A stretch of 64,000 nt of DNA, from assembly GCF_032191835.1 (NCBI RefSeq), contig NC_083237.1, forward strand, positions 806,001 through 870,000. Direction: 5' to 3'. This stretch comes from Heteronotia binoei (taxonomy: Eukaryota). The notes below the pieces were generated by a model. The model ran no database searches. It was not told the origin of the DNA and saw only the letters and a program-made list of their open reading frames with translations. Shown here one piece after another: positions 19,670 through 63,280 of this stretch; within the stretch, counting starts at the first letter, position 1; every line of letters starts with the position of its first letter. Made by a program: the position numbers and the translations under genes.

Positions 19670-22600
19670 CAGCCCAAGAAGAAGCAACGCAGCTCATCCA
19701 CTGAGACACCGGAAGAAAGGAAGGACAGAGGAAACTCCTCCGCCTCTATCCAGATTTTCCCTCCGGAGCTGGTATGTGAGAGAGGGGTTGGGGAGCTGCA
19801 GGGTGGCCCTTCCTGCCCAGTTCCAGAGGGCAGCCACGATGGTCAGCAACAGAAGGGTTAGATTTGAATCCCGGAGCACCTGGGAGGCCCACAAGAGCTT
19901 CCAGGTGGGGCTTTCAAGATTCACCCCTCCTCCCACCTTCTGACTGGGAGAAAAGGATCCCAAGGTCTCCATTCCTACTCCTGTCAGACCAAGGGAGTTT
20001 GGACTCCTGGCCACATGTCCCCTGAAACTCTTCTTGGCCTCAGAAGCGATACTGGATTCAAATCTAACTGCCCTGCCTGCACAGTGACTGAGCCTCTTTT
20101 CTCTCTCTCTCTCTCTCCCGCCCAGTTGTACTACATCATCTCCTTCTTGCCAGTGAAGGACATGGTCGCTCTGGGCCAGACCTGCCGGTACTTCTATGAG
20201 GTGTGCGACAGCGAGGGTGTCTGGCAGAAGATTTGCCGTCGCCTGTCCCCTCGGCTGCGGGATGAGAACTCCTTGGGCGGCAGCCGGCCCTGGAAGCGCT
20301 CGGCCATCCTCAACTGTCAGTATAGCTTGGTGTGGAATGGGGTGCCCGGAGAAGTGGGGAAGCCTTGCCCAAGGAAGGGTGGCGTTTGCACAGGGGAGAG
20401 AGTCCTGGGCACAGCGTGGGGGAGGAGCCCTTGTGCAAGGGGGAGGAATGGCAGCAGGTTGGAGAAAAGAAGGCTGAGCAGAAACACCAAGTGAGTCTTG
20501 CACCCCGCCCCTTCCCCACACCATGCAGGGATGGGAAAGGTGATGCTGAGCCAGATCCTCCAGAGAGACCCAATTCCCCTGCCCTGGGGTCTTTCTGTCC
20601 CACAGACACCAAGGGCTTGTACTTCCAGATGTTCAGTGGCCGCCGGCACTTCGTCAGCAAGACAGTCGCCCCGCTGCTCTCGCACGGCTACCGGAAGTTC
20701 CTGCCCACCAAGGACCACGTCTTCATCCTCGACTACAATGGCACCCTCTTCTTCCTCAAGAACGCCCTGGTCTCCTCCACCATGGGCAACGTCCAGTGGC
20801 GCCGTGCCTGCCGCTATGTTGTGCTGTGCCGCAGTGCCAAAGATGTACGTGCCTGGGGGGGGGGGGGACACTTGCCTTACAAGAGATGCTGAAAGGGGGG
20901 CAAACAGTGTTTCATTCCAGTGTTGCATTCACAGGGAGCACAGAGGCATGGCCCAGAACATGCAAGGGGTGGAGGGGAAAGTCTCTCTTGTTAGCAGGTT
21001 CTAGAGAAAGAACATCTTGCTGCTGCTGCTTTCTTGTCTCTGAGATACCTAGCTACCAATTAGAGAAGGGCTACTCTACAGTGGAGGGACCTCAGAGAAG
21101 TTCAGACCCCTTCCTGGGGACCTGCCCTGTTCAGTCAGCCAGGTGGTCAGATGGTGGAGGTGGCCTGCCAGAGAGAGGAGCTCTCCAGGGGCACAGATGC
21201 CCTCTTGAGGAGGCAGGTGGCCTCCTGCAGCTAGTGCTGATTGGTGTTCCTGATGCCTCAGGGAAACCTTTTCTGTGAATCTTGGTCAAGGAGGGTGGAG
21301 GAAGGTACTTCAGGGGTGAATCTTGAAGGCTCCTGCTTCCGTTACCCACTGCCTTTCCAGTAACTTCTGCTGCAGGCCTCACCGTGTTTCCTGAGCAGCA
21401 GCACCCTCTTCCAGTGAAAGAGAAACAACAGGAGCTGGGACTGGGGCTGCCCTCTTTTTTCTCTGAGCCACTGTCAGCAGCCCCACACACAGATATTCTC
21501 CAAATGAAGTTCCTGCCGGGAGGGAGGGGTGGGAAACCTTCCCCTCTTCCATGACAGAAAATGGAGAAATGGGAGTCCCTTAAAATAGAAGAAATGGCCA
21601 ACGAATCTGAAAGCCCATCAGCAGTGAAAGAGTGGGGAGGGGCCCTGCCTCAGTGGCAGATTATCTGCTTGGCATGCAGAAGGTCCCAGGTTCAATCCCC
21701 AGCATCTCCAGTTAAAGAGATCAGGAAGTGGAGTTGTATAAGAGCACCTTAGACCCTGGAGAGTCATTGCCTGTCTGAGTAGACAGCACTGATTTGTTGG
21801 ACCAAGAGGCTGATTCAGGATAAGGCAGTGTCCTGCATCCCACATGTATAAGCAGGACAGAGAAGAAACAGTCTTCAGCTACACTGTGTGAACCATACTC
21901 TTGTGTCTTGATTCAAAACAGATACAGGAACATGACCTGAATGAGGAAACACCATACGTAGATAGGGGGGAAAGAAGAACCCATGGATGTACTCAATGAT
22001 CCTTCTTCATCTCTACCCATAAGAATGATGGAGGATGGAGCCTGAGAAATTAATAGGCCTAAGTCCATTCTTGAACTAATTGGAAGGTCCATATTTGGAA
22101 GGCAGGCAGCCCTAAGTTCGGTCCCAGGCACCTCCCTCTACCCTGGGCTCTGTGAGCCAGGTGGATCAACACTCTGACTCAATATAAGGCAGATTCCCTA
22201 GAGAGAGAGAAAAACTCACAGCCATTATGCTACATTTGCTCTTAAATAAAATTGGAGCCTTGATTGGCTTGACTCCAGGGGGAGAGTTAGAGGTGGAGAC
22301 TGTAATCTGGGCAGGGGCTTGGGAGAGCTAGTTTAGGGTGAGGTACTGAAATCATAACCCCTTTTAATATTCAGGTATTGGCAAGTATAGAGGGTTAGTT
22401 CTGTTCCCTGTATATTGCGCTGCGGGCTTGCCTAGGCCTACAGAGACTCATGCTGCAATAAAGAGTGTACCAGTTGACCAGTCATCTTTGCCACAGCAGT
22501 TGGCAACCTTTTGATGCCCAAAAGGAAAGAGATATTCCAGTGCAGAAGATTACCTTTCTGGCCCATTTGTTTCCCCCTTTAGAGAAACACTAAATACAAT

Positions 22601-25600
22601 TCCCTGCAGCAATATTTTGAGTTCCTTGGTATCCTTTCTTCTTTTTCTGTCTGCAGTTTGCCACGGACCCCAGGAGTGACACTGTGTACCGCAAATATCT
22701 GTATGTACTGGCAACCCGAGAGCAGCCCATAGCCACAACGATGGGGCGCGGTGAGGCTGGAACGGCTGCCAGTAGCCGCCTCTGTGACTGCGTGGAGGTC
22801 TACCTGCAATCCAGCGGGCAGCGAGTGTTCAAGATGACTTTCCATTTCTCTATGAAGTTCAAGCAGATTGTGTTGGTGGGGCAGGAGACTGAGAGGTCCC
22901 TCTTACTTCTGACAGGTGAATTATTATAGAATCAGAGTTGGAAGGGACCTCCAGGGTCATCTAGTCCAATCCCCTGCACGACCCAGAAAATTCACAAATC
23001 CCTCCCCCTAAATTCACAGCAGCAGCATTCCTGTCAGATGTCCATCTAGCCTCTGTTTAAAAACCTCCAAAGGAGAGCCCACCACCTCCCAAGGAACCAC
23101 TGAGGAAATGCTCTGTCAAGAAGTTCTTCCTAATGTTGAGCCAAAACCTCTTTTGATTTAATTTCAACCAGTTGGTTCTGGTCTCACCTTCAGAGACCAT
23201 AGAAAGCAACTCTGCACCATCCTCTGTATGACAGCCCTTCAAGTACTTGAAGATGGTGATCATATCACTACTCAGTCTCCTCTCCAGGCTAAACATACCC
23301 AGCTCCCTCAGTCTTTCGTCATAAGACTTGGTCTCCAAACCCCTCACAATCTTCGCTCCCCTCCTCTGGACTGTTCCAGCTTGTCTATATACTTCTTAAA
23401 ATGTGGTGCCCCAAACTGAACACAATACTTCAGGTGAGGTCTAACCAGAGCAGAGTACAGCGATACCATCACATCACGTGATCTGGACGCTAGACTTCTG
23501 TTGAAATTGCATTGGCCTTTTTAGCTACCACATCACACTCCCACCTATTGTTCAATGTATGGTCAACTAACGAGTCCTAGGTCTTTTTCTTGCTTTAGCC
23601 CAGTTTTCCAGCCTGTCAAGGTCATCCTATATCCTGACTCTGTCTTCTACTGTATTTGCTATCCGTTGCAATTTAGTGTCATCTGAAAATTTAATAAGCA
23701 TTCCCTCTATTCCTTAATCCAAATAATGTATAAATATATTAAATTAAATATATATTAATTTATTATTAAATTAAACAGGTCCCAGGACAGATCCTTGTGA
23801 CACTTCACTTGTCACTCCTCTCCCAGAGGATGAGGAACCATTCACCAGCACTCTTTGGGTGCAATCTGTCAACCAGTTGCAGATCCAGCTAACGGTAATA
23901 GGATCCAAACCACATTTTACCAATTTTTCAACAAGAATATTATGTGGAACCTTATCAAAAGCCTTAATGAAATCCAGATGCAGTATGTCTACAGTAGTCC
24001 CCTGATCCAGCAAGGTAGTAACTTTCTCAAAATGAGATAAGGTTAGCCTGACATGGCTTGTTCTTGAGAAACCCGTGCTGGATGTTAGTAATCACAGCCA
24101 TCTTTTTTAAATGTAAGAGGAAAGAGAGAGACAGTGAATTACTGCACCTCATGGGCACAGGGTCAGCAAAGGTTTGGGACAGAGAGCAACCATGTCTTTA
24201 GATTTAACAAATGCCTTTTTACACCTCCACTGACTGTTCTCATTCCTGAAAGAACTTCTCTTCCAAGCAGACCATGCCTATTGCTCCCAGACCTCTTAAT
24301 CTCGTAATGTTACCAAATGGGACATGTACCATCATTTCTTCTGTCTACTATAGAGAGTCTTTCTACACAAGATAGCTCTGAAATGATTTGCAAGGAAAAC
24401 TACAAAGGAGCCTTTGCATGCTGTGCTCACGCAGTCCTTACAGAGGCAAATCTCTCTCCTCCCAGAAAGAAGCCCATGCCTGCTTGTTTGGTGCATGCGG
24501 ATGCAGCCTCACATTCTCCACCTTGTGGGGTGGATTGTTTCTCTGCAGAGGAAGGGAAGATCTACAGTCTGGTGGTGAATGAGACACAACTGGATCAGCC
24601 TCGCTCCTACACCGTGCAGCTGGCTCTGCGCAAAGTCTCCAAGTGCCTCCCCCACATCTCTATCCGCCACATGCATTCAAACCAGAGCAGTGCTCTCTTC
24701 CTCACAGGTAACTCTCTGCTCTGCTGGCAAGATCAGTCCCAGGCCAAAGGCAGACCCAGACTCTGCCCAGACCTCCTCTCCGTCTTGCATCTTGACCAGC
24801 ACTGCTGCCGCCACTGCTGATTCCCAGCTATTAAACTGCAGATGCTGCCTGGCACTTAAGAGCTGCATTGACCACAGCCAGCCGGTGAGGCAGTGATTAA
24901 AATGTCGGACTAGGATCTGGGAGACCCAGGACTGGATCCTCCTCCCTCTGCCAGGAAAGCCAACTGGGTGACCACAGACCAGCCCCACACTGGCAGCCTC
25001 ACCTACCCCACAGGGCAGCGGTGAGGATGAAACGGGAGGAGAGGGATGTAAACTACTTTGGGTCCCCAGGGAGAAGAAAAGCAGGATATAAATAAAATGA
25101 ATAAAAACGTTACCACCATCACACAAGGCAGTCAAGGGCTGAGAAATGGCCAGTGGGGACTGAGGGAGAAAAGCACAGGTGGAGCCAGAGGTTTGGGGAG
25201 AGGATGCTGGAGGGAACATCTTTGTAGAAGGAGGAGGAGAGAAGTGGCCGAATGAACACAGAATGAGAGGCTATTTCAGGCAAGATGCAGAGATGGAGAT
25301 GCAAGCAGGAGAGCAATCGTGGTGTGGGGAAAGCACAGAGCAATGATAGGTTCAGGCAGAGAGGAGGGAGGTCAGACACTGTGGAATGGAGTTTAAAAAA
25401 TGAGGTCTGGAAGCTTGACGTTGGTACACTAAGCATGGTAGAGGCCTATTCTGCTTTAAGCCAAGACTGCAGCAGAGAGGACCCTCCATACTAATTGGTG
25501 CCCCTTTTGTTTTGCCTCGGGGACACACACATTCTGCGCTGGGGGAGATGGTTCAGCCCGTGATCCTCTCTCCCCTCTTCAGATGAAGGTGCCGTGTACT

Positions 25601-27922
25601 TCGAGGTCCACTCGCCTGGTGTCTACCGTGATCTCTTTGGCACCCTCCATGCTTTTGACCCTCTGGATCAGCAGATGCCCTTGGCCCTCTCTCTTCCAGC
25701 AAAGGTAACACAAAGTGGGTCTGTGCCCCCACCCCAAGCTTTGGACAGCACTGGTGGAGGAAGTGGTACAAGACGGGTCTCTGGGATTTCAGTATCAGGA
25801 ACTAGGGGGCTGGTGGCTGGCCTCTGTCCCCATCCCCTTCCTGCCCTCTGGCCGCAGGCCACCCTCTCTCCTTGGGACTCCAGCATCCACGGCTGTCACA
25901 AGCAGTGGGCAGCTAGATAGTCCTTCTCTTTGCCTGACCACAGTGTAGGTTGTCCACACTGCTAGAGCAGATGACAAAACCAGGCCATCTGGCCTCCTTG
26001 TCCAAAGTCTGTAATGAAGGTTTGCAAGGGCTGGCATCCCCTCGTATTCCTGACTGCTCTCCCCTTGACTCTGAGGAGCTGCAGTCTGCAGTCCATGGGC
26101 AAATGCTCTTGAGGAGCCAGGTTTGGCATCAGCAGGAGGCTGTGAGGCTGAGTGGCTGCTAGCCCTGGTTCAAATCATGGCCCAGGATGCTCCACTCTTT
26201 CTGCCTTATCCAGTCATGCCCTCAGCCCTTTCTTTGCCTCACTTCTCCTTACCTCCAGGTGCTTACTTGTGCCCTTGGCTACAACCATCTGGGGCTGGTG
26301 GATGAGTTTGGGAGGATGTTCATGCAAGGAAATAACCGCTATGGCCAGCTTGGCACAGGAGACAAGATTGACCGTGGGGAGCCTGCACAGGTGAGATGCC
26401 AGGGGCGGAGAGCAGAGTGCCCAACTGAGATGCAGAGGGAAGGGGGAGCAGGCGGCCTATACGATGTGCAGAGAGGGGGAGCGGCAGACCGTCCAGTCCC
26501 CATTCTGTCTCCCGAGGGGTCAGCGGTCCTGGGAGCCAACACTGGTGAGCCTGGTCTGCCCAGTATCAGCCTCACTCCCTGCAACAGCATTAGGAGAACC
26601 CAAATGATTTTGAGCTCAGCCTGCTTTGGGCCAAGTCCGCCCCATTCTGTGGGCTGTGCAGCCACAGGTGAATATTCCTGAAGACATGAAATCATACAGA
26701 AAAAGAGTTGGAACACAATTCTGTCTTGAGTCATTCAGTCTGATTCAACCCTGCTAGTTGCAAGAAACTTCCCAGATACAGCTGGAGGGGAGGGGAAGAC
26801 TCTCTGCCCTGCTCAGACACCTTCTCTGTTCTCTTCCCATCCAGGTGCACTACCTGAAGTGCCCCATAGACTTGTGGTGTGGCCTCAACCATACGCTGGT
26901 GCTGAGCCACAGTGGAGACCTTGGGAAGGACCTCATGGGCTGTGGCTGTGGTGCTGGAGGGCGCCTTCCTGGGTGGCCAAAAGGCAGTGCCTCTTTTGTC
27001 CGGCTGCACCTCAAGGTGAGGGGCACCCCCTGTGGTGAGGGCAGGAGGGTGGCCACCAGGAGCATGGTGCAGGGACTCCTGCCCAAGGTAAGCATCCAAC
27101 ATGGGAGGCAGGCATTCCTGGGCAATCCTCATCATCTGAGCTTTGGTCCCCCTCCACCCCACAGCCAAGCTTTCTTTCTTTTGTGTTTGTTTGTTTTTCC
27201 AAAGAGCAACTTTCTAAAGTTAAAAGCAGAGTATTTCCTCTTTCAGGCCAAGAAGTTCCCAGCAGGTCTGAGTGAGCTTTCTCGTGGCTCAACAAAGGTT
27301 GAGGCATTCACTGAGTGCCTCCCTCACTCCCTCCTTATACCTTTTTCCAAAATGTTTTCTCTACTCACCACTGAATAGGAGAAAGATGACATAATTTGGC
27401 ATAGAACAAAAACTCCCCCAAACTGAGCAAGAAAAAGGGTCACCCGCTTTTTGCAAGGCATGCAGTGTTGCCTAAGGGACCCAGTGGATTGCATGCTGCT
27501 GAAGAGAATGTCTCGAATTCCCAGAAGCCCTTCTCCTTCTGGCACACGGAGCCTCTCCTGTGCTGCTCTCACCTGAGCTGTCCCTGCTGCAGGTGCCCCC
27601 CTGTGTCCGCCGCATCTGCTCCACCCGGGAGTGCCTCTACATGCTGTCCAGCCATGACGTTGAGGAAGTGCCCGCCTACCGAGAGCTGCCCGCCAGCAAG
27701 GCAGGACTGCTGCCTAGCGACACGGAAGCCATGGCTGCGCAGGCATGCGAGGAGTACCTGAGCCAGCTGCACAAGTGCCGGACGCTAGAGGGGCGCATGG
27801 CCAAAATGAAGGAAGCTGTGGGCAGCATGCCCCTCATGACATTCCAGAAAGACTTCTTCTGGGAGGCTTTGGACATGATTCAGCGGGCAGCTGAACTCCG
27901 AGGTTCCCCTCCTTCCAGCTAG
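19670..27922 (+). CDS. FBXO24: F-box only protein 24 (F-box plus RCC1-like repeats), spliced
   Basis: Exons 19670(or 19673)-19771, 20126-20315, 20606-20844, 22657-22915, 24549-24707, 25583-25704, 26259-26390, 26845-27015, 27593-27922; all GT-AG and phase-consistent. Peptides [54 protein letters not shown] and [11 protein letters not shown] match FBXO24. Confidence 0.95.
21635..21840 (+). mobile_element. tRNA(Ala)-headed SINE (family A)
   Basis: GCCTCAGTGGCAGA..GCTTGGCATGCAGAAGGTCCCAGGTTCAATCCCCAGCATCTCCA head. Confidence 0.8.
22927..24110 (-). mobile_element. CR1 LINE fragment (RT region and ORF2 C-terminus), degenerate
   Basis: [28 protein letters not shown] and [24 protein letters not shown]; 3' end GACCCTGGAGGTCCCTTCCAACTCTGATTCTA. 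Confidence 0.9.
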
Positions 27923-28867: not shown

Positions 28868-29140
28868 TCCTTAGGGTTTGTAGAATCTTTCGGGCTCAAG
28901 TGCCGTGTTCTACTGGAGAAAGTTTCCCTTCCAGACGTTTCGTTCTCAGCTGCGGAGAACATCCTCAGTGGCGTTGCAGCCGGAGCAGGCGCTCTGACCT
29001 TCTTGGCTGCTGTGCATTGAGTGGGGCCAGGGCTGCTGGAGAGCTGCTATTTGTAGGCTGGAGGGGGTGTGATGAAAGGGCAATTGGTTTGTGGATGTGC
29101 CCATTGTTTGGTGGGGCTTCATGGAAGGGTAGTGATAATT
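28868..29140 (-). mobile_element. Penelope-like element fragment
   Basis: Contains the CTGAGGA..CGAAACGTC motif typical of Penelope-like repeats; near-identical to 39230-39502. Confidence 0.7.
28931..28971 (-). ncRNA. Minimal type I hammerhead ribozyme motif (Penelope-associated)
   Basis: CCA-CUGAGGA-U-GUUCUC(cgcagcu)GAGAAC-GAAAC-GUC-UGG: intact core, 6-bp stem II, palindromic ACGU in place of stem III, 3-bp stem I. Confidence 0.7.
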
Positions 29141-30155
29141 CCCAACATTCCCTCTGGGAGGCAATGGAGAGAGAAAGAGAGTGGCCCAAAGGGAGATCAG
29201 GCACCCAACAGAACGGATGTGAAGGCAGCTGCAGGGCTGATCAGAGCAGCACTTGGAGAGTAATTAACGAGTGGAATTCACTGCCACAAGACAGGACCAC
29301 GTCTGCTGTCTTAGATGGCTGAGGAGGAGGAGGAAGAAGAGAAGAGAGGTCTGCCAAAGGATCTTAGTCATAATGGCCCAATAGATCCTCCATGTTCAGA
29401 GGCAGCGCACCTGCCTTCCTCACCCACTTGTAGGCTTTCCAGAGGAATCTGGTGGGTTGCTGTTCTGGCTTTCACTTACACCAAAATGTACCCCCAATCC
29501 AGACATGGTCAGGGGGTTTCCTCCTGTCTTTAGCCCCACCTATTAGCACAGTCACTCTGTTCTGCATTCTCCAGCAGAATGAGGAGCCTGGCTTGGCCTT
29601 TGCCGAACTCTGGAAGCTCAAGGACTTCTGGGAAAGAACATGGTCAGGTTTCCCTGCCCTAGACTAACTCTCATGCTCTTAGCTCAGCCCACCTTGAGAA
29701 GGAAGCCTTTTATGCATTCGTTCTGTGAGAGAAGCCAGGTCCAGTAAAACAGCTCCGCAGACTCACCTTAGGGGATGGGCCAAGGCATTGCATGCACAAG
29801 GTCTCTAGAGAGCAGGAGACCTCTCTGAGCCAGTCAGAGGAGACCATTGTGAGCAAGGGGGCGCAGGAGTCTGCCTCCGCATGAGGCCCCTGGGTATGTT
29901 TCTACCTGTCCCTCTTGGCTAATCTGCAGTGGCTGGAGGCGCACTGCCTTGGAACAGTGAGATCGTCTTTCTGGCTGTCATGGCTGGTAAATGCAGCTAG
30001 ACCCCACGACGACACATACACCTTGTTTTGTAAAGGTCCTGTTCTGCTAAGAGCCTGTGGCAATGAGTTCCACAGACTGACTTCCTTTCCTTCTTCCCTG
30101 ACCTGCTGCATGTTTTACTGGATATCCCTTGATTGTTGTGTGGATCTTTTTCTTT

Positions 30156-30157
<2 letters not shown>

Positions 30158-30195
<38 letters not shown>
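30158..30195. repeat. Compound (CT)n(CA)n microsatellite
   Basis: Directly visible. Confidence 0.9.
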
Positions 30196-32188
30196 AGAGC
30201 ACTACCCCTTCATGCCACAGCCTCCTCGAAAGAGGAGTCAGGCAGCACCTGCCATCCCTTCCAGCAGCAGCAGAGCTGCTCCCTCAGATGCCGGAAGCCC
30301 CCATGCATGACACTGGGGGGAGGGGGGAGGGGGGGCTCCTAGTTTTAAATATAAGCAGACGTTGTCTCCAGGGCACTTGGCCTTCTTCAGTTGTATAAGT
30401 TAAACTGAGCCCTCCATTACTTGAATGATCACATACAGAAAACTGACCATACTCAGAATGGAGCTCACACTAAGGTGTTCACCTGTGGAGTAAGTGGTAT
30501 CAAATGTTCCTGGGCCAAAACGTTTCCTTTGCCCGTGGACCTTCTTGGGTCCAGTCAGAAATGCTCCAGTGGAGGGCTCAGGTACAACTGGAGAAGAGCC
30601 AGCTGCCGGGGGGGGGGGGGAGGGGGGGAGGTGTAGGCATTCAAGAACCCCTCCCTACAGGCCATTGTCTGGACTCAGAAACACAGGCAGTCCCTTGCCA
30701 GGGAAGCCAGGTCCCCAGTGTAGAGGAGAGGTGAAGGAAGCTCTGGGGCTGCAGGAAAAGAGAGCCAGGCTCTCTCTTGGGACCCGCCAGGGCCAGGGCT
30801 CCCATTTGACCCCACCTCCCAGCCAGAAGCATCTGCTTTGAGCAATGAACCAAGAAGAGCTGGAATTGTGCCGGGCGTCTTCTTGGGGTCCTGATGCCAG
30901 GCCCTTGGCTTTGCCCTGGGGAATGGGAAGAAGAGCCCCGAGGTGCAGAAGAGTCACAGTCTGAGCCTACGCACTTGAAGGTCCTTAGACAGACAGGATA
31001 ACCCCAGCATTTGATGTCCCAGCCCAGCCTGAAAGAAGCCAAAAGTGATGCTGTCTTTGTCATTTTTTGAAAGAAGAGGGGGGCTGGACACAAGAGCAGG
31101 GCAGCCCTTCTGGACAGTGCCAGGCCACAGCACCCCCCGGGGACCCAAAAGCACTCCACACATGCTCAAAGGCAGACACTTCCTCGTGGACCGCCTGCGC
31201 CTCCACTTAAAGACAACAACAAATTGCACTGAGGAGCCAGGCTGCATGGGTGTGCAGGGAGGGAGCGGCAAGGGATGATCCGGTTTGCCCCGCCTGCTTG
31301 TCTTCCTCACCTCCAGCAGCTGTCACATGGCAGGACGCTGACCTCAATTTCCCTCTGGGGGAGGGGAGGGGAAATGTCCTTCTGGCCAAAGGGGCAGGGA
31401 AGAGGCCAGTCAAGTGGCCCTTTGGTGGGGTCGGTCCGGAGGTAACAGCAAGCACAAGTTTCCACTGGGGCTATTTTTACCGCAGCTCCCCCCTCCCCCA
31501 TCCCCTATTTTTATGCATTAAGCCCAACAACGCCATGTGTGCATGTATATATTTAGGAAGAATTAAAAACGACTGTGAGCCTGGGAATGATGCGGGGTGG
31601 GGGGGTGGGAAGGGGGCTGAGAGAGAGGCAGGGGCTTTGTCAGAAGACCTTTTAAAGAGAAGTCTAGAAGGAAGGATCGGGGAAGGGAAGCAGGACTGGG
31701 GAGGGGGTGGGGGAGAACTACCACAGTTGCTGCCGAGCCGAGTGGCCCCCTGGCCTGCTCGCAGTCTCCCAGAAGGCAGGCCAGCTCTTACTGCTGAGGA
31801 GCTGCCTCCCTCCCTCTGCTCGACCCCGTCGTCCTTCCCGGAAGCCCCTGCAGCCTGGCTCCGCAGTGGAACCTCCCTCCTCCCCCAGCACACAGCGTGC
31901 CTACCGAACCCAAATGGAAATCTAGCCTGGCTGCTTTCCCCACACAAGGCCCACGGATTTGCATGCTGGGAAATCAGCCCTGCCGCCGCAGTCTCCCTCT
32001 CCTTCCGCTCCCTGCTGGGACAGGGGCGCCGAGATCCTGGCCACCTCCTGGCTGCCTCGCCCACCAGGCCCTTGGCTGGGCAGGGAGCGCGTCGCCGTGT
32101 CATCCTCCTCCACTGCATGCAGCCCGCGTCCCCCTGCAAGGTCCGGGAGCAGCCGCGCTTCGCAGACCCGCAGTGCCCGCCGGCGCCC

Positions 32189-33247
32189 TCAGTCCCCCTT
32201 CCTGCGCTGGCTGCGCTGCTGCGTGGCGTAGGCCCGGGCGCCAAAGCAGCCGACGATGGTGGCCAGAAGCAGGAGCAAGCAGAGCATCACGCCGAAGGTG
32301 GAGAGGAAGGTGGGCGCTCTGGGCAGCGGCGGGGGGGCGGCGCCCAGCTCCCGGATCTCGCCGCGGATCATGTGGAGCTCGTCCAGGATGCTCATGAAGG
32401 TGCAGCAGTGGAACCACTGGTGGCTGTGGCCCCAGATGTCGAACTTGCCCGGGCTGAGGCGCTCGGGGATCTTGCTGACGTTGAAGAGCCCGGAGGCCAG
32501 CAGCCAGCAGCAGTGCCGCAGGAAGAAGCGCCCCGTGCCCTGGCCGCCGCCCACCCGCCACAGCTTGTGGAAGACCGGGATGGAGACCACGGCGAAGGGC
32601 AGCAGGAAGACGAGCGTGCGGATGAGGTAGCGGTGGCGCGGCCACTGGTGGCGGCTGCTGCAGCAGGCCAGGGTGCAGAAGAGGGCGACGAGGCACGCCG
32701 AGGGCACGTACAGGGCCTCGAACCAGCCGCCCAGCAGCGCCCCGAGCCCGCCGGCGCCCTCCCTGCCCAGCCAGGGGCCCGAGGAGAGGTTGGAGGCGCC
32801 GCCGGCGGGCGCCGGGTGGATGTAGTAGAAGTAGGCCAAGGAGGAGCCCACGGTGTAGGCGCTGATGGTGCCGTAGTCGATGTAGAAGCACACCTCGCGC
32901 ATGAGCAGCGACATGGAGTTGAAGAGGTGCGCCATGCTGCTGGCCACCAGCAGGCCGCCCACGCCCAGGCAGTAGCTCCACAGGGGGTAGTAGAAGGGCT
33001 CCAGCAGGCCCGCGCCCTCGCCCCAGAACTGCTCCGCCACGCGGAAGGCGAAGATGAAGACGGCCACGAAGTGCGTCCAGAAGTTGCCCGTCTCGTTGGT
33101 GGGCTGGAAGGCCGAGGCCAGGCACTGCGCGAAGGTGGAGCCCGGGCACCGGTAGCCGCTCAGGATGAAGCTCTCCGCCACGCTCGCCGGCACCTCGCTG
33201 GAGCGCAGCAGCAGCGCCCCCGCCGCCCGCCGGCCCGCCGCGCCCAT
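32189..33247 (-). CDS. Intronless PAQR9-like protein (progestin and adipoQ receptor family, membrane progestin receptor epsilon-like), 352 aa
   Basis: ATG at 33247 to stop at 32189 (353 codons). PAQR motifs FILSGYR..NETGNFWTH, SSMAH, YIDY, FNVSKIPERLSPGKFDIWGHSHQWFH; several hydrophobic segments. Closest to PAQR9, but the locus differs from that of PAQR9, so no symbol is assigned. Confidence 0.9.
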   Translation of the reverse strand: MGAAGRRAAGALLLRSSEVPASVAESFILSGYRCPGSTFAQCLASAFQPTNETGNFWTHFVAVFIFAFRVAEQFWGEGAGLLEPFYYPLWSYCLGVGGLLVASSMAHLFNSMSLLMREVCFYIDYGTISAYTVGSSLAYFYYIHPAPAGGASNLSSGPWLGREGAGGLGALLGGWFEALYVPSACLVALFCTLACCSSRHQWPRHRYLIRTLVFLLPFAVVSIPVFHKLWRVGGGQGTGRFFLRHCCWLLASGLFNVSKIPERLSPGKFDIWGHSHQWFHCCTFMSILDELHMIRGEIRELGAAPPPLPRAPTFLSTFGVMLCLLLLLATIVGCFGARAYATQQRSQRRKGD

Positions 33248-33696
33248 CCCCCGGCCTCCCAGCTGCCCGCGCTCTGCTTCGGCCTGCCCCGCCGCGAGGA
33301 GCAGGTGCCGCTGGGCTGGCGGGCGGGCGGGCGGGGCGCGGGAGAGCGCCGCTTCTGGCCGGGATGCTGCAGAAAAGCGGCCGCGGCCTCGGCGGGGGGG
33401 GGGGGGAGGGCAGGCTGCAGAGGATGCGCGGCTCCCCCCCCCTCCCTGCGCTCGCCTCAGCCCCGCCCCGCCCGCTGCAGGTGCGGCTTTGCGCGCCGGC
33501 TCAGCGCCCGCGCAGCACGAAGGCCCCGCCCAGCCCCGCCCCCAGCCCCCAAAGCCGCCCGCCCGAGAGCCCAGCGCGCCAGGCGGCGGCCCGGCCAGCC
33601 GGGGGGGGGGTGGGGAGGGTGCAGCGGGCAAAGGGCCGGAGCCCTGGCTGGAGAGGGGCCGCCCTTGCCGCTCCCGCCCCCCCCCCCCCCCGCTGA

Positions 33697-33706
33697 CTAT
33701 TTTTAG
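33697..33706 (-). promoter_or_regulatory. MEF2 consensus site (CTAAAAATAG) upstream of the PAQR9-like gene
   Basis: Exact YTA(A/T)4TAR match, an isolated AT patch in very GC-rich DNA about 450 nt upstream of the ATG. Confidence 0.45.
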
Positions 33707-34939
33707 GCACAGCCCGGCTGGAGAGGGGGGGAGGCGCAAGAAGGGCAGGCAGGCGCTCGCGCTCTGGCGATGGACGGGCCCACCTGCGCTCCCCTCCCCT
33801 CCCCTCCCCAGCCCCGCGGTCGCTTTGGGACAGCTGCGTGTGCCCCCCCCCCCTCGCCTCGCCTCCCCCCCAGGAGAGGAGCCGCCGGACGCGTGGCCCA
33901 GCCGCCGCCAGGGGGCGCGCGGCACCAACTCTCCCGAGGCCCCCCAGCCCCACTGCCGAGGGTCGCCACCGCTGAGCGGGAGGGGCCGCGGCTTTAGGTG
34001 GCCCAGGTGAGGCTGCTGGGACTGGGGGAGGCCTGGCCGGCCGGGATCAGGCGGCACCTGCGGTCATGTGCCGGAGGGCTGCAGGCAGCAGAGGCCTCGC
34101 GGGGACTGACTGGGGGTGGCGCCTGTGCTGCTGCTGGCTCCCTCCCTCGCAGGAGGACGCCCCCACACCTCTGCCGGCCACTCAAGGCGCCCCCTCCCCT
34201 GAGCACCAGTGCCCGCCCTCATGGCGCCCCACACCGACCCCCTGCCCTTGGGAACGGTGCGGAGGGCCCCGCTGGGAGGGACTCTTGCGGCCTGTCCATG
34301 GGGCGCGGGCAGGGGCTGCGCCTGGAGGCGCTTCTGGAGAGGGCTGGGCGGGGGGCGCGAACGCTGCTGCTGGAAGAGGGGAGGGGGCCAGAGGAACACG
34401 CAGCCCGAGGAAGCACCGGCCCATGGGACCCCCCCCCCGCAGCTTTGGCCAAGGCGCTTTGGGGAGGGGCCTGCAGGGCACACGAGGAGATCATTCGCAA
34501 GCCAGGCTGGGGGGCTCCCTCCACGGGGTTTACGGCAGCCCTCTCCTGCCCCCCGCCCGTCCCTCGGAAGGCCCCGGGACTCTCCCGCTCGCTCCAAGCG
34601 CCCTGGCGGGGACTTTCCTCGGGGACTGGCGCTGGGGAGAGGGGGGCAGCTTGGGCGGCAGAGGGGACCCGCGGAGACCCTTCCCCCGCCTCGGCGCCCC
34701 TCCGCTGCTTCCTCCTCGCCTGGGCCAGCCGGGGGCACCTCCTGCCATCAAGGGCCAAGCGGTGGCGCGGGAGGCACCCGGGGCTGCCCTGGACGAACCG
34801 CGGCGCGGCTGAGGATTGGCGTGTGCCAGCAGCAGCCTGGGGGCGTCCCGCCTTGGGGCCCGCTGGACGGAGCCCCCCTCCGGGCCCCCCCTGCAGCCCC
34901 GAGAGAGAGAGAGAGCGAGAGCGCGCTTCTTTTCCGCCT

Positions 34940-34967: not shown

Positions 34968-37900
34968 TCAGGCGCGGCTCCTGGCCGGGGGGGCGGCGGC
35001 GGCGGGGGGGCAGAGGCGCTTGCTGAAGGCGGTCAGGAGCTGCTGCTGCTGCGGCCGGAAGGGAACCACGAAGCTGCTGGGCAACAGGAGGCCCTGGCCC
35101 GCCTCTCCCGCCTGCCCCATGAAGACGTAGCTGGCACCTGCAAGGACACCGAGGACGGCAGCTCCAGAGAGGGCGCCCCCTTCAGGCCCACCCAGGCCCT
35201 GCCCCCGCCGCCCCCCAGGGGCTCTTTTTCTCCAGCTAATTTGGGGGGGGGGGGACAAGCTGGAGCTCGGGGAGAACTTCGCCCGGGCGCCACCCCGCCC
35301 TTCTGGAGCCCCACCCCGGTAGCGGAGGGGAGGAGAGGCACGCACCTTTCTTGAGGAGGGGGCACTGTCTGCAGGGCACTTCCAGGCGGAGGAGGGCGTC
35401 GCTTCCCGGGGCCGGGAGACTCAGGCTGCCCGCCTTGTAGGTGTGGCTCAGCAGGACGGTGGCGGTCACTCGCGTCCCCGCGCCTCGCATCGCCGCCTTC
35501 ACAGTCCCCGCGATCACTGCCCCAGCCCGGGGAGAGGGAGGAGAGGAGAGGGCGAAGAGGAGAGGGGAGGGGAGGAGAAGAGAGGGGAGGAGGGGGAGGA
35601 GAGGAGAGAAGAGGGAGAGGAGAGCAGAGGAGAGGGAGAAGGGAGGCGAGGGGGGAGGAGGAGAAGGGAGGGGAGGAGTGGGGAGGGGAGGGGAGGAGAA
35701 AAGAGGGAGGAGAGGAGAGGAGGGAAGGAGAGGAGGGTGCCGTCAAGGGACCGCACCGGACCCACCCACCCCCTGCCGGGATGCCCGACGGAGGAGGGGG
35801 GCCTCTCTCCTGGGGGCTGCAGCCACCCCCTCTGGCAGAATTGGGGGCGGCCCATCCCATCCCATCCATGCCTGCCCTGCCCTCCCCTGCCGCCCTAGGA
35901 GTTCAAAGGCCAGCATCTGGAGCAGCCTCCCCCCCCCGCAAGACCCCCGCACGGAGGCACAAACTCCTCACCAAAGTCGTTGGCGCAGAAGTTGCTCTGG
36001 AGGGTCCCGGTCCGGCGGCACTGCTGGGGGCACGTGACGTCACCTGCATGCGAGCAGCCCCTTAGTAGTCCCTCCAGGCCCCGCCGCCCCCCACCTCCCC
36101 CCCTCCCGCAGGGCCCTCTCTTACCGGGGCTGGGGGCGGTGGGCGCGGGGCCGCCGCTGGGCTTGGGCTTGCGGGCGGGGGGCTGCTTGGGGCGCCCGGC
36201 GGGCTTGGTGGGGGGGCTTGGGCTTGGGCGGGGCAGGCCTGGGGCCGGGCGGGGCGGGCTTGGTGCCCGGGAAGACGCGGCTGGGGGGCTTGGAAACGTC
36301 CTCGTCGCCGCCGCCGCCTTTGGCCGCCAGCTCGTTGCGGCTCTGCACCACGTAGGAGGCGGAGAAGCCGTCGGCCGTGACGCTCAGGTCCGAGACGAAC
36401 TGGACCAGCAGCTCGTTGCCCTCCGAGTAGACCGGGCTGGGGGGGGGAGAGACCGAGGAGGGCCTGAGGCCGCTTCTCCCGCCCAGGCCCCAGCCCCCCC
36501 CCCCATGCCCGGCCCGCCAGCCCCCCCACCCCTCTCCCTCCCTCCCCCCTCCTTGCCTGGGGGGGTACCTGGGCGAGAGGTCCCCGCAGAACTTGCCGAT
36601 CCGCCGCGAGTCGTCCCGGTCGGCCCCATTGAAGACGGCCACGTAGTCGTAGCGGCAGTAGGTGTCGGGCTCCACGTCGAACTTCCCGAAGGTCAAGGCG
36701 ATCACCTGCGGGGGGGGCAGAGCTGGAGTCCGCGGCCCCGCCCCCCGCCCCCCCCCCCGCCCCGCGGCCCGGAGGCAGCGGCCGCGCTTACCTTGTCCTT
36801 CGGCGCCAGGATGTGCCACGAGCAGCTGATGCCGGCCGGGTAGTCGCTCTCGGGCCAGTTGGGGGTCCTGAGGCTGCCCTGCGGCTTCTCCAGCTTCCCC
36901 CCACAGAACTGGTTCTCTGCAGCCGGCAAGGAAGAGAGCCCCGTCAGGGCATCCCCGCCCCTTCTGCCCCGGCCCGGGAGAGGACGCCCTGCGGCTGTGC
37001 AGGAAGGAGGCCGGCGGGGCAACCCGGGGCGCGCTCCCTCTCAGCCCGCACACGAAGCCGAAGGCAGCAGGAGTCCTCCGCAGGGGAGCACACTGGCCGG
37101 GAACGTGCAACTGGCTGCCCTTCCCGAGGCGCCGCCTGCAGATCCCCCCCCCCCACCGCGGGGCCTCGTTCCCGCATCCCAAGGAAGAGCCCGCGCCACG
37201 CCTCGCACACCTTCTGCCGCCGCGCGCAGCCAGGCCCCGCACAGCCCAGGCGCCAAAGAGCGCGGAGCTCCAGGCTGCCGCCCCCCCGGCCAATGGCGCT
37301 GGCCTCTTGCTTCCCCGCAGGCCTCCCTAGCTAGGCCCGCCTGGCCTGAAGGAGTCCGCTGGGCTCTTGCTTGCCCGGGCCGGGGAGCGCCAAACCAAAC
37401 CCCCGCCCGCTCCGCCCTCCTCCCTGTTGGACACCAGTGGCCGGCCGGCCTGCGGGGGGGGCTGAGCTGGCCTCTTCTGGCGGGGGTGGGGGCGCTGCTG
37501 GGCCTCTGGAGGGGGGGGGCTCAGGCCCCAAGGCAAAGAGAAGCCTGCTCAGCAAAACAGCAATTTGGACGACCACAGAGCTCTGGCTAATGACGGGCTG
37601 CGAGGAGACGGGGGGGGGGGGGTCGCCTGGCCGCGAGCAGGAGGGAGGGGGCCTTCGGGGGCCGCAACTTCACAAGCCCCGCCCTGCCCCCACCCACGGC
37701 GGCAGGGCCCGCAGCTCCCCCTAGCCTCCCCCCCCCCCACTCTGCCAAGAGCCCCCCAGTTGCAGCTATACAAACTGCAGGGGGGGCATCTCAGCAGTCC
37801 CGCCAGAAGCCCCAGGAGTTCTGCCCGGGAGAGAGACGTGGGCGCGGGGGCTGGCAGCAGCCTGAGACGGGAGGGGGCCGCCCTCCTCCTGGCCCAGGGC

Positions 37901-40174
37901 CTGGTCTCTCGCAAAGGCGAGGGAGGGGCAGGCGGCGGCTCTGGGGAGGCGACTCTCCCACGACCGAAGCAGGACGGGCCCCGGAGGGGTTTCGCCAGCC
38001 CTCGAGCCCCCCCCGCCCCCCCCGAAGCGGCGCTGGCGGCTTCTCCAGCAAAGAGGCTGGATGCGGGGCGCTCAAGGCATTCCCGGGGCAGCTGTGCAGG
38101 GGCGAGGCGGGGGGAGCCGTGAAGCGGAGCCGCCCCCTCCCTCCCCCCCCCCCCCCCGGGCTCACCGTTGACGTGCGGGAGGCCGCCGCTGAACCAGACG
38201 AGGAAGCCGCGCCCGCCGGAGCCCTCGTCGGAGACCATGCGCAGGGCCATGCGGTTGCCGGTGGAGAGGATGGCCCCGGGCCGGAAGGTGCCGCAGAAGC
38301 GGCCCAGGCGCTGCCCCTCCACCGCCTGGTGCCCGTTGTAGACGTCCAGGTAGTCGTAGCGGCAGACCGGGTCCGGCTCCAGGTCGAAGACGCGGAAGGA
38401 GAGCATCACCACCTGCCCCTCCGGCACCTGCGGCCCAAAGGGGAGCGGGCAGCGCCCGGCTGCTCAGGCTGCCCCGAGGGACCCGAAACCCCCCTCCAGA
38501 CTCCTCCCCAGCGGGGGGGCTCCCTCATTCTCAGCCCCCCCCCCCCACATCACACAACATTTTAAGACGGAGAACAAAATAAAGTGTGCTTCTCCCCTTG
38601 TGTGCAGACAAGGGGTTTTTTTTTGCCTTGTGCGTGTCCGTATTTGTGCCTCTGTGCCTGGAGGCCATGATCCAGCCTGCCTCTGCCTCCCCACTCTGGT
38701 ATTCCTGGGAGGTCGCCCATCCCAGCCGAGTCAGCCCTGCTTCGCTTGGGAGATCTGAGGCGGCCCCGGGGCTTGCAGCTGGGCCCTCATCCAGAACCTT
38801 ATCCTGGGGGGCGGCGGGGGGCTCCTTGACTCATGGGCTGCCTCCACACGGCACCAAGTTTTGCAACTCGATTTCTGCTGTTTTGCATAGGAAAACTCCA
38901 GCTGCAAAGCGCATGACTTAACGAGGTGTGGAGGCACCCATGGAAGTCATCTCAGGTCCGATGCAGCCGTGACCAGGTTCCTCTCTCTCCGCAATCTCCC
39001 TCCGGAATCGGGATTCTGCTCCTCTCTGCCGGGCTCCGGAGAGATTCCTTTAGCCCCCGCAGGCCCAGTGCAGGGATGCGCCCACAACCCTCTTGGCAGA
39101 GCGCTTCTGAGCACACACAGAGTTATCAAAGATTTCAGGTTCTCACAGCTGGTAACATCATTAGGGTTTGTAGAATCTTTCGGGCTCAAGTGCCGTGTTC
39201 TACTGGAGAAAGTTTTCCTTCCAGACAGCCAGTCTCCTTATCACTACCCTTCCAAGAAGCCCCACCAAACAATGGGCACATCCACAAACCAATTGCCCTT
39301 TCACCACACCCCCTCCAGCCTAGAAATAGCAGCTCTCCAGCAGCCCTGGCCCCACTCAATGCACAGCCAAGAAGGTCAGAGCGCCTGCTCCGGCTGCAAC
39401 GCCACTGAGGATGTTCTCCGCAGCTGAGAACGAAACGTCTGGAAGAAAAACTTTCTCCAGTAGAACACGGCACTTGAGCCCGAAAGATTCTACAAACCCT
39501 AACACACAGAGTTCTTTAGGATTCTCAGCCAGAAAAGCCAAGCAGTGCTCACAAGCGCGGTTGGAAGCGGCTGCTAGTTACCGTGATGGTCCAGGTGCAG
39601 GTCTTGCTGGGGGGGTAGTGGGCCGGGAAGCCCTCGCTGGCGATGTAGCCGGTGTCTCCGGTGTGGTCGCCCCCGCAGAGGAAGACAGGCCTGGGCAGAC
39701 AGAGGGAGAAAGCGGGAGGGAGGGAGGGAGGGGCCGGCTGGGAGGGTCCCTGCCCAGGTCTCCGCGAGAGGAGCGAAGCCTCGAGGGCCGCCCGCCCGCC
39801 CGCCCCCTCCCCTCCCCTCCTCCCGCCCAGTAGCTGGGGCCGCCCCCGCCCGCCCGCCCTTCCTTCCAAGAATTCCGGGAATCCGCTCGGCGTCTGGGCT
39901 GCTGGCAGCTGGCGCAGCTCCCGCCCCCCTAAGCCCTTCCAGATGTGCGGCGGCTGCAGCGCGGAGGGGCCCGAGGGGGCGGCCGGGGCTCTGGGCGGGG
40001 GGCTGGGGCTCCCCGGGGGCGCTGGGGCGGGGGGCTGCCGTCGGAGGAGGAGGGGGCGGCGGCGGGCGGGTACCTGGAGTGGTTGCCGGAGGGGGCAGCG
40101 GCCCGGGGGGTCTCCTGGGCCCGGCTCAGGCGCAGCAGCAGCAGCAGCAGAGGGACGAGGGCGGGCGGCTCCAT
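34968..40174 (-). CDS. PCOLCE: Procollagen C-endopeptidase enhancer 1 (signal peptide, CUB1, CUB2, NTR), spliced; 1-nt frameshift in exon 6 as assembled
   Basis: Exons 40174-40074, 39690-39582, 38427-38166, 36916-36792, 36705-36569, 36436-36125, 36043-35972, 35516-35346, 35137-34968. [45 protein letters not shown] and [12 protein letters not shown] favour PCOLCE over PCOLCE2; FBXO24/LRCH4 are neighbours as in human. Confidence 0.93.
35531..35737. repeat. About 205-bp GA-rich polypurine/polypyrimidine tract in PCOLCE intron 7
   Basis: Nearly pure G/A on the plus strand, starting about 14 nt from the exon 8 acceptor. Confidence 0.9.
39161..39502 (+). mobile_element. Penelope-like element with 66-bp inverted terminal duplication
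   Basis: 39161-39226 is the near-perfect reverse complement of 39437-39502; the interior matches 28868-29140. Confidence 0.75.
39402..39442 (+). ncRNA. Minimal type I hammerhead ribozyme motif (Penelope-associated)
   Basis: CCACTGAGGATGTTCTCCGCAGCTGAGAACGAAACGTCTGG; predicted cleavage after C39439. Confidence 0.7.

Positions 40175-45116: not shown

Positions 45117-63280
<18,164 letters not shown>

What the first reader, a model, noticed from the sequence alone, without database searches (positions are those of the whole stretch)
32189..33247. Intronless PAQR9 paralogue beside PCOLCE: a probable ohnologue absent from the human locus
Seen: an intact 352-aa ORF with the PAQR motifs, including the metal-site residues typical of the AdipoR/PAQR family (SSMAH, the TM3 Asp in IDY, HSHQWFH), closest to PAQR9. 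Known (from recall): human PAQR9 lies next to PCOLCE2 on 3q23, 3q and 7q22 form a paralogon (TFRC/TFR2, ACTL6A/B, GNB4/GNB2, LRCH3/LRCH4), and human LRCH4-FBXO24-PCOLCE has no PAQR gene. Inference: this is the sister copy of PAQR9, co-duplicated with PCOLCE/PCOLCE2, retained in this reptile and lost on the human lineage. That would make it an essentially uncharacterised steroid or lipid membrane receptor.
Basis: partly seen in the sequence, partly recalled or inferred. Interest (0 to 1): 0.8.

Follow-up and report, generated by a model that had tools for sequence, protein, structure and literature searches.

The report
Ancient second PAQR9-type receptor gene
This gecko carries an intact, conserved second copy of the membrane progesterone receptor epsilon gene (PAQR9); the copy dates from before sharks and bony vertebrates split, is missing from mammals and birds in the databases searched, and is the gene that fish researchers call "paqr9".

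Summary
Window 32189-33247 (minus strand) is an uninterrupted 352-codon ORF. It matches Pfam HlyIII/PAQR at 1.4e-31, keeps every PAQR metal-site motif, and its model has an AdipoR-like fold.

The window comes from Heteronotia binoei, assembly GCA_032191835.1. The same assembly has a separate PAQR9 on another chromosome, only about 41% identical.

In a maximum-likelihood tree the window protein falls in a well-supported clade (98/100). This clade holds the squamate, salamander, caecilian and lungfish "epsilon-like" proteins together with all shark, coelacanth and ray-finned-fish "paqr9" proteins. Lungfish and tetrapod PAQR9 form a separate clade (100/99). AU tests reject a duplication inside sarcopterygians (p=0.0002) and one after the shark split (p=0.009).

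The gene lies between PCOLCE (exons 72-90% identical to human PCPE-1) and FBXO24. A lacertid has the same arrangement, and a caecilian and a lamprey also have a PCOLCE-family neighbour. Bird PAQR9 sits beside U2SURP instead.

The gene is not wholly uncharacterised, because zebrafish "paqr9" is its orthologue. It follows that fish paqr9 is not the orthologue of mammalian PAQR9. Expression could not be tested.

The parts
32189..33247 (-). Single-exon CDS (352 aa plus stop) of a PAQR9-type class II PAQR, called 'PAQR9-like' or L-type in this report
   Evidence: Translation; Pfam HlyIII 1.4e-31; orthologues at E<=1e-189; invariant motifs; model with pLDDT 87.6 matching AdipoR1/2
32001..34000 (.). 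CpG-island-like stretch (GC 0.70-0.78, CpG o/e 0.73-0.76) covering the CDS and its 5' flank; probably the promoter region
   Evidence: flanking sequence at 29-31 kb has CpG o/e of 0.16-0.18
34968..40174 (-). PCOLCE (procollagen C-endopeptidase enhancer 1) gene, upstream of the PAQR gene on the same strand
   Evidence: Called gene with 485-aa CUB-CUB-NTR product; CUB exons found by Pfam; exons 72-90% identical to human PCPE-1 chains 6fzv/9en2
20100..27922 (+). FBXO24-type gene (F-box plus RCC1 repeats), convergent with the PAQR gene; the start coordinate is approximate
   Evidence: Called gene with F-box/RCC1 product; F-box in ORF 19868-20491; RCC1 in ORF 26187-26678
45120..62984 (-). Context only: a KIF1-family kinesin gene beyond PCOLCE (motor-domain exons at 58.5-63 kb, FHA-region exon near 51.6 kb); it probably runs on towards the window end
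   Evidence: Pfam Kinesin hits; KIF1B/KIF1A/KIF1C matches in the PDB

Best explanation
The ORF is a functional, single-exon gene for a sixth vertebrate mPR-type PAQR. It is the ancient paralogue, most likely the 2R ohnologue, of PAQR9/mPR-epsilon, and it was duplicated together with its PCOLCE-family neighbour. One copy (PCOLCE2-PAQR9-U2SURP, the human 3q23 type) survives in lungfish and tetrapods. The other copy, linked to PCOLCE (this gene), survives in sharks, ray-finned fishes, coelacanth, lungfish, caecilians, salamanders and squamates. It is absent from the mammal, bird, turtle, crocodilian and frog proteins in the databases searched. The gene that fish workers call paqr9 is therefore this gene's orthologue, not the orthologue of mammalian PAQR9. 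On mechanism (inferred): the protein has a seven-helix AdipoR-like core plus a C-terminal eighth helix, and the His3/Asp/Ser zinc site is intact. It should therefore work like other mPRs, as a zinc-containing membrane protein that responds to progestins and/or hydrolyses a lipid. By orthology with zebrafish paqr9, a role in oocyte and egg biology is likely. What is shown here: the gene, its motifs, its fold, purifying selection, its phylogenetic position, its local synteny and the second PAQR9 in the same genome. What is inferred: whole-genome duplication as the mode of origin, ligand and activity, and expression.
For: Identity: Pfam HlyIII at 1.4e-31; all eight motif residues invariant; AlphaFold pLDDT 87.6 and pTM 0.88, with an eighth helix at 315-351; Foldseek top 8 hits are all AdipoR1/2 at TM 0.73-0.82, GPCRs at <=0.44. 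Constraint: gecko-Podarcis dN=0.106, dS=0.413, omega 0.26; intact orthologues in more than 15 squamates; indels in relatives' contigs are in frame. Paralogy: the same assembly holds PAQR9 (P0124) on a different chromosome. Tree: L-type clade 98/100 with a topology like the species tree; PAQR9 clade 100/99. AU tests reject a sarcopterygian-specific duplication (p=0.0002 and 0.00015) and a post-shark duplication (p=0.009). Identities: window protein against zebrafish-group paqr9 57%, against its own PAQR9 41%; primate PAQR9 against Danio 38%. Synteny: PCOLCE / L / FBXO24 in gecko and Podarcis; a CUB-CUB-NTR gene beside the L-type gene in Microcaecilia; a CUB/NTR gene 8 kb from lamprey mPR-epsilon; bird PAQR9 beside U2SURP. 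PMC6604198 places zebrafish paqr9 beside pcolceb, mouse and human PAQR9 in one conserved arrangement, and lamprey paqr9 beside trpc1-pcolce2.
Against: No RNA evidence: no RNA run holds the gene, and the contigs that were laid come from relatives and are of unknown library type. No canonical poly(A) signal lies within 3.2 kb downstream of the stop. The PAQR9 clade has a long stem (1.16), so long-branch effects could distort the root. The position of cyclostomes is unresolved (support 86/70; AU p=0.11 and 0.35). The scenario needs at least 3 losses of each copy. Local synteny in fugu, shark and sturgeon shows no PCOLCE within 10 kb. The PCOLCE2-PAQR9 adjacency and the 3q/7q22 paralogon were not tested directly. 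Absence from birds and other groups may reflect GC-rich sequence missing from assemblies (GC3 of this gene is 0.99).
Confidence: 0.8

Rival explanations
1. Tetrapod and lungfish PAQR9 is a fast-evolving daughter copy that arose from this gene in the sarcopterygian stem, for example by retroposition (both genes lack introns). On this view the window gene and fish paqr9 are simply the ancestral PAQR9, and there is no 2R ohnologue.
For: The 3q-type clade holds only lungfish and tetrapods and has a long stem of 1.16. Cyclostome sequences share 13 of 26 diagnostic residues with the L-type and only 3 with PAQR9. This scenario needs no losses in fishes.
Against: AU tests reject PAQR9 as sister to the sarcopterygian L-type genes (p=0.0002 and 0.00015) and to the bony-vertebrate L-type genes (p=0.009). 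A single-gene copy would have had to land beside PCOLCE2, the paralogue of PCOLCE (PMC6604198). Lamprey mPR-epsilon already has a PCOLCE-family neighbour.
Confidence: 0.12
2. The ORF is a non-functional or unexpressed relic: an open frame kept by chance or by GC-rich composition.
For: No transcript evidence could be obtained. In 74% GC sequence long ORFs arise by chance in several frames. No canonical poly(A) signal lies nearby.
Against: Omega is 0.26 over the roughly 349 aligned codons between gecko and lacertid. All motif residues are invariant. Intact full-length orthologues occur from sharks to squamates. The model is confident. The CpG-island-like stretch and the Kozak context fit an active gene.
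Confidence: 0.04
3. The gene is a recent lineage-specific retrocopy of PAQR9, or the genome's only PAQR9 moved to a new place.
For: The gene lacks introns, as a retrocopy would.
Against: It is only about 41% identical to the PAQR9 of the same assembly, which lies on another chromosome. Orthologues occur in fishes and amphibians. Synteny is conserved in Podarcis and a caecilian. PAQR9 itself has essentially a single coding exon, so lack of introns tells us nothing.
Confidence: 0.01

Closest known systems
PAQR9 / mPR-epsilon of mammals and other tetrapods (the human 3q23 gene)
   Same: Same PAQR subfamily: together they form a 100/100 clade apart from the mPR-gamma/delta and invertebrate outgroups. 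The coding region lacks introns, the zinc-site motifs are identical, there is a C-terminal eighth helix, and a PCOLCE-family gene is the neighbour.
   Different: Only 39-41% identical. It falls in a separate clade, with 26 fixed diagnostic residues. It lies beside PCOLCE and FBXO24, not PCOLCE2 and U2SURP. The same genome carries both genes.
Fish 'paqr9' (zebrafish paqr9/mPR-epsilon; knockout shows reduced chorion elevation, Tanvir et al. 2024 as cited in PMC13562381)
   Same: Orthologous by the tree: one clade at 98/100 with a topology like the species tree. Identity is 55-60%. Zebrafish paqr9 lies beside pcolceb according to PMC6604198.
   Different: It carries the name of the mammalian gene, although it is not that gene's orthologue. 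In fugu and sturgeon the PCOLCE neighbour is not within 10 kb.
Adiponectin receptors AdipoR1/AdipoR2 (PAQR1/2; PDB 5LXG, 6KS0, 5LWY)
   Same: Same seven-helix fold (TM-score 0.73-0.82, E about 1e-9). Same His3/Asp/Ser zinc-site motif positions.
   Different: About 20% identity. The window protein has an extra C-terminal helix typical of mPRs. Ceramidase activity has not been shown for the mPR-epsilon type.

Membership tests
PAQR / HlyIII superfamily (PF03006) | HlyIII domain scoring above Pfam's gathering threshold | tested here: met
   110.4 bits against a cut-off of 26.2, E=1.4e-31, residues 47-286
PAQR / HlyIII superfamily (PF03006) | Conserved motifs ExxNxxxH, SxxxH, the TM3 Asp and HxxxH (zinc site; the CREST H3-S-D motif) | tested here: met
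   E52, N55, H59, S103, H107, D124, H276 and H280 are all present and invariant in 61 aligned sequences
PAQR / HlyIII superfamily (PF03006) | AdipoR-like seven-transmembrane fold | tested here: met
   Model with pLDDT 87.6 and pTM 0.88; the top 8 PDB hits are all AdipoR1/2, TM 0.73-0.82
PAQR / HlyIII superfamily (PF03006) | Zinc binding and hydrolase or receptor activity | not testable with these tools
   Needs biochemistry
Class II PAQR (mPR, PAQR5-9), epsilon branch | Groups with mPR-epsilon sequences rather than gamma, delta or invertebrate PAQRs | tested here: met
   The epsilon-type clade, including the window protein, has 100/100 support against the outgroups
Class II PAQR (mPR, PAQR5-9), epsilon branch | An additional C-terminal (eighth) transmembrane helix | tested here: met
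   Helix 315-351 lies after the HxxxH helix in the model; review PMC13562381 states that mPRs have eight segments
Class II PAQR (mPR, PAQR5-9), epsilon branch | Specific progestin binding and G-protein coupling | not testable with these tools
PAQR9 in the strict sense (orthologues of human PAQR9) | Falls inside the clade that contains mammalian PAQR9 | tested here: not met
   It lies outside the 100/99 PAQR9 clade and inside the 98/100 L-type clade; forced unions are rejected by AU tests
PAQR9 in the strict sense (orthologues of human PAQR9) | Located in the PCOLCE2-PAQR9-U2SURP neighbourhood | tested here: not met
   The neighbours are PCOLCE (PCPE-1-like exons) and FBXO24. Bird PAQR9 lies beside U2SURP. 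The gecko's own PAQR9 is on another chromosome.
2R ohnologue pair (PAQR9 / PAQR9-like) | The duplication predates the split of cartilaginous and bony vertebrates | tested here: met
   The L-type clade includes sharks (98/100); later duplications are rejected at p=0.0002 and p=0.009
2R ohnologue pair (PAQR9 / PAQR9-like) | Both copies are flanked by members of other paralogue pairs (PCOLCE/PCOLCE2 and a wider paralogon) | tested here: inconclusive
   PCOLCE beside the L-type gene was shown in three tetrapods. PCOLCE2 beside PAQR9 comes only from PMC6604198. The wider 3q/7q22 paralogon is recalled, not tested.

The most novel reading that the evidence does not exclude
Vertebrates ancestrally had six, not five, mPR subtypes. 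The PCOLCE-linked 'epsilon-2' gene is the slowly evolving copy kept by sharks, all ray-finned fishes, coelacanth, lungfish, salamanders, caecilians and squamates. Mammalian PAQR9 is the divergent sister copy and has no fish orthologue. Zebrafish paqr9 phenotypes (chorion elevation, oocyte maturation) and mouse PAQR9 phenotypes (ketogenesis, glucose and lipid homeostasis) therefore describe two different genes, although current reviews pool them.
Probability: 0.75. Interest if true: 0.6.

Novelty: new member of a known kind. Interest (0 to 1): 0.55.

Why it matters
The mPR field counts five vertebrate subtypes. PMC9179843 says so, and PMC6604198 states that epsilon is single-copy. Fish paqr9 is treated as the model for mammalian PAQR9: the table in PMC13562381 pools the zebrafish knockout with mouse phenotypes. 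The evidence here points to hidden paralogy. Fish paqr9 and this reptile gene are one orthologue group, and mammalian PAQR9 is another. This changes how knockout and ligand-binding data transfer between fish and mammals. It also identifies squamates, salamanders, caecilians and lungfish as animals in which both genes can be compared in one genome, and it adds a clean case of reciprocal ohnologue loss. Automatic annotation already labels the gene 'epsilon-like', so the gene itself is not new. Its evolutionary status appears undescribed in the literature that could be searched.

Tried and rejected
- Expression. The look-up of sequencing runs found no RNA run holding the gene. Read laying on four small runs gave only contigs from related species, 85-95% alike and confined to the CDS, from libraries of unknown type. 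This says nothing either way about transcription.
- Synteny in fishes within 10-kb flanks was uninformative. Fugu shows FREM-like, LRR, aconitase and CaMKII genes. The shark Heptranchias shows INCA1. Sturgeon shows an MSS51-like gene. Bichir had no neighbours within reach. Latimeria and Danio aesculapii look-ups failed or were withheld.
- The gecko PAQR9 locus has no other called gene within 10 kb, so PCOLCE2 adjacency could not be seen directly.
- Pfam scans of 20 long ORFs elsewhere in the window gave nothing except a reverse-transcriptase fragment. Long ORFs in this GC-rich DNA are mostly spurious.
- An LRR-motif scan found no LRCH4-like exon in the window. LRCH4 was neither confirmed nor excluded.
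- An ESM Atlas look-up of the kinesin C-terminal exon gave only a weak 'Dendrin' lead at 0.78, which was rejected.
- The YN00 dN/dS method failed with a numerical error, so only NG86 values are reported.
- The retrocopy and translocation readings were rejected (see the rival explanations).
- The search of earlier findings returned nothing for this region or for these gene names.

Full report
**1. The observation**

The minus strand of window 32189-33247 is an uninterrupted ORF of 352 codons plus a stop. The surrounding 6 kb is 70-78% GC. Long open frames occur there by chance on several frames, for example an 818-aa ORF on the opposite strand. ORF length is therefore not evidence of a gene.

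The evidence is of other kinds:
- The protein matches Pfam HlyIII/PAQR at E=1.4e-31, 110 bits against a cut-off of 26.
- It has full-length homologues at E=1e-189 and below.
These eight positions are invariant in all 61 PAQR sequences aligned.
- The start codon has a good context, GGG-ATG-G. A CpG-island-like stretch (CpG o/e 0.73-0.76) covers the CDS and its 5' flank.

**2. Source and neighbours**

The exact protein lies in assembly GCA_032191835.1, record CM063339.1 (68 Mb), about 0.83 Mb from one end. Another protein in the same assembly is named Heteronotia binoei, so the window is from that gecko.

- Upstream, on the same strand, lies a 485-aa CUB-CUB-NTR gene at window 34968-40174. Its exons are 72-90% identical to human procollagen C-endopeptidase enhancer 1 (PDB 6fzv, 9en2). 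From my own knowledge, PCPE-1 and PCPE-2 are only about 43% identical, so this gene is PCOLCE rather than PCOLCE2.
- Downstream, and convergent, lies an F-box plus RCC1 gene, which is the FBXO24 architecture.
- Beyond PCOLCE lies a KIF1-family kinesin.

**3. A separate PAQR9 in the same genome**

The 50%-identity representative P0124 is 'membrane progestin receptor epsilon [Heteronotia binoei]'. It lies on CM063330.1 (150 Mb) of the same assembly. It is about 41% identical to the window protein. This removes the 'simple translocation' reading.

**4. Phylogeny**

Searches with the window protein, the gecko PAQR9 and the axolotl 'epsilon-like' protein returned two sets that do not overlap.

- The window protein's set holds squamate, salamander, caecilian, lungfish and sturgeon 'epsilon-like' proteins, together with the proteins named 'epsilon' or PAQR9 in coelacanth, bichir, gar, teleosts and sharks. 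Identity to the window protein is 50-83%.
- The gecko PAQR9 set holds only tetrapods and Protopterus at 57% or more. Identity then drops sharply to 37-39% for fishes.

A careful IQ-TREE analysis (LG+C20 PMSF, 61 sequences, 380 columns) gave the following:
- An L-type clade at 98/100. Sharks, ray-finned fishes and sarcopterygians are arranged as in the species tree, and the window protein sits among the squamates (99/100).
- A lungfish plus tetrapod PAQR9 clade at 100/99, on a long stem (1.16).
- Cyclostomes weakly attached to the PAQR9 clade (86/70).

AU tests gave these results:

| Hypothesis forced | p (AU) |
|---|---|
| PAQR9 joined to lungfish/tetrapod L-type genes | 0.0002 |
| The same, with coelacanth added | 0.00015 |
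| PAQR9 joined to all bony-vertebrate L-type genes, sharks outside | 0.009 |
| Cyclostomes outside all jawed-vertebrate (PAQR9 + L-type) genes | 0.11 |
| Cyclostomes joined to the L-type clade | 0.35 |

The first three hypotheses are rejected, so the duplication predates crown gnathostomes. The position of cyclostomes is left open. Unnamed Logan hits all fall among squamates, sturgeons or teleosts.

The consequence is that fish 'paqr9' is orthologous to this gene. The Danio sequence is 57% identical to the gecko L-type protein but only 38% identical to primate PAQR9. It is not the orthologue of mammalian PAQR9.

**5. Synteny elsewhere**

- Podarcis muralis has the same arrangement, PCOLCE, then the L-type gene, then a convergent FBXO24.
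- Microcaecilia has a CUB-CUB-NTR gene within 10 kb of its L-type gene.
- Lamprey mPR-epsilon has a CUB/NTR gene 8 kb away.
- A songbird PAQR9 lies beside U2SURP, identified by its RRM-Surp-CID-cwf21 domains. From recall, U2SURP is a neighbour of PAQR9 on human 3q23.
- PMC6604198 reports zebrafish paqr9 beside pcolceb, lamprey paqr9 beside trpc1-pcolce2, and a shared human/mouse arrangement. It also states that epsilon is single-copy.
- Fugu, shark and sturgeon flanks showed no PCOLCE within 10 kb.

A PCOLCE-family gene beside both paralogues favours a block duplication. The wider 3q/7q22 paralogon was not tested here.

**6. Constraint**

Between gecko and Podarcis, dN=0.106, dS=0.413 and omega=0.26 over 349 codons (NG86). 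GC3 is 0.99 in the gecko and 0.89 in Podarcis. With so few states available at third positions, dS is probably underestimated, which would make omega an overestimate. Contigs from related species cover the CDS, and their indels sum to multiples of three. No RNA run holds the gene, so expression remains untested. No AATAAA or ATTAAA signal lies within 3.2 kb after the stop.

**7. Structure and likely mechanism**

The AlphaFold2 model built on a 44-sequence alignment is confident (pLDDT 87.6, pTM 0.88). Low confidence is confined to the N-terminal tip and to the loop at 149-162, which is the low-complexity, indel-prone stretch. The model ends in a long helix at 315-351. All eight significant PDB matches are AdipoR1 or AdipoR2 (TM 0.73-0.82). 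GPCRs score 0.44 or less.

With the H3-S-D zinc site intact, the protein should work like other class II PAQRs. For these, the literature offers two mechanisms:
- progestin-triggered G-protein signalling (PMC9179843, PMC6604198);
- a zinc-dependent lipid-hydrolase core (PMC13562381).

The zebrafish paqr9 knockout, which shows reduced chorion elevation and abnormal embryos (cited in PMC13562381), applies to this orthologue group.

**8. Novelty**

NCBI pipelines already label the gene 'epsilon-like'. A full-text search for paqr9-like, paqr9a/b, PAQR9L or 'receptor epsilon-like' found only one paper, on a clam, which is irrelevant. Reviews count five mPR subtypes. I file this as a new member of a known kind, with a useful correction of orthology.

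**9. Loss pattern, as seen in the databases searched**

- The L-type gene is absent from frogs, mammals, turtles, crocodilians and birds.
- The 3q-type gene is absent from sharks, ray-finned fishes and coelacanth.

Each pattern needs about three losses. The extreme GC content of the L-type gene means that absence from bird or turtle assemblies could be an assembly artefact.

Noticed in passing
window 45120-62984 (-); L004:16112-20996: A KIF1-family kinesin lies beyond PCOLCE: Pfam Kinesin exons at 58.5-63 kb and an FHA-region exon matching KIF1B/A/C. In the shark Heptranchias the L-type PAQR gene is followed by INCA1. From recall, INCA1 and KIF1C are neighbours on human 17p13.2, so the ancestral locus may have joined segments that are now on human 7q22 and 17p13.
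   Followed up: partly
window 20100-40174: In the gecko and in Podarcis, PCOLCE is on the strand opposite FBXO24, with the PAQR gene between them. From recall, human FBXO24 and PCOLCE are adjacent on the same strand. An inversion whose breakpoints flank the PAQR gene could have accompanied its loss in mammals. This is speculation.
   Followed up: no
window 32189-33247: The CDS has an extreme third-position GC content (GC3=0.99, overall GC 0.70). The locus lies about 0.83 Mb from the end of a 68-Mb chromosome, which suggests strong GC-biased gene conversion. Such genes are often missing from assemblies, a caveat for calling the gene lost in birds and turtles.
   Followed up: partly
window 50496-51050 (-): A reverse-transcriptase (RVT_1) fragment (E=2.5e-5, below Pfam's cut-off), probably a retroelement remnant in a kinesin intron.
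   Followed up: no
window 49399-49529 and 57726-57880: Two runs of N (131 and 155 bases) lie inside the kinesin gene region. They were left as they are.
   Followed up: no
window 29001-32188 (-): No AATAAA or ATTAAA signal occurs in the 3.2 kb downstream of the PAQR stop codon. The 3' UTR may be long, or a variant signal may be used.
   Followed up: no
alignment (proteins P0122, P0270, P0330): Of 26 residues that separate L-type from PAQR9, lamprey and hagfish share 13 with the L-type and 3 with PAQR9. The tree nevertheless places them weakly with PAQR9 (86/70). The L-type looks like the conservative copy, and the tree position of cyclostomes may be long-branch attraction.
   Followed up: partly
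tree (P0320, P0324): Sceloporus and platypus PAQR9 group together inside the birds with high support. This is clearly an artefact: platypus is flagged for odd amino-acid composition, and these are probably GC-biased or mispredicted sequences.
   Followed up: no
L002:10001-11345: The annotated gecko PAQR9 gene spans 1345 nt for a 418-aa product and does not translate straight through. The annotation must include a short intron or a frame correction in GC-rich sequence.
   Followed up: no
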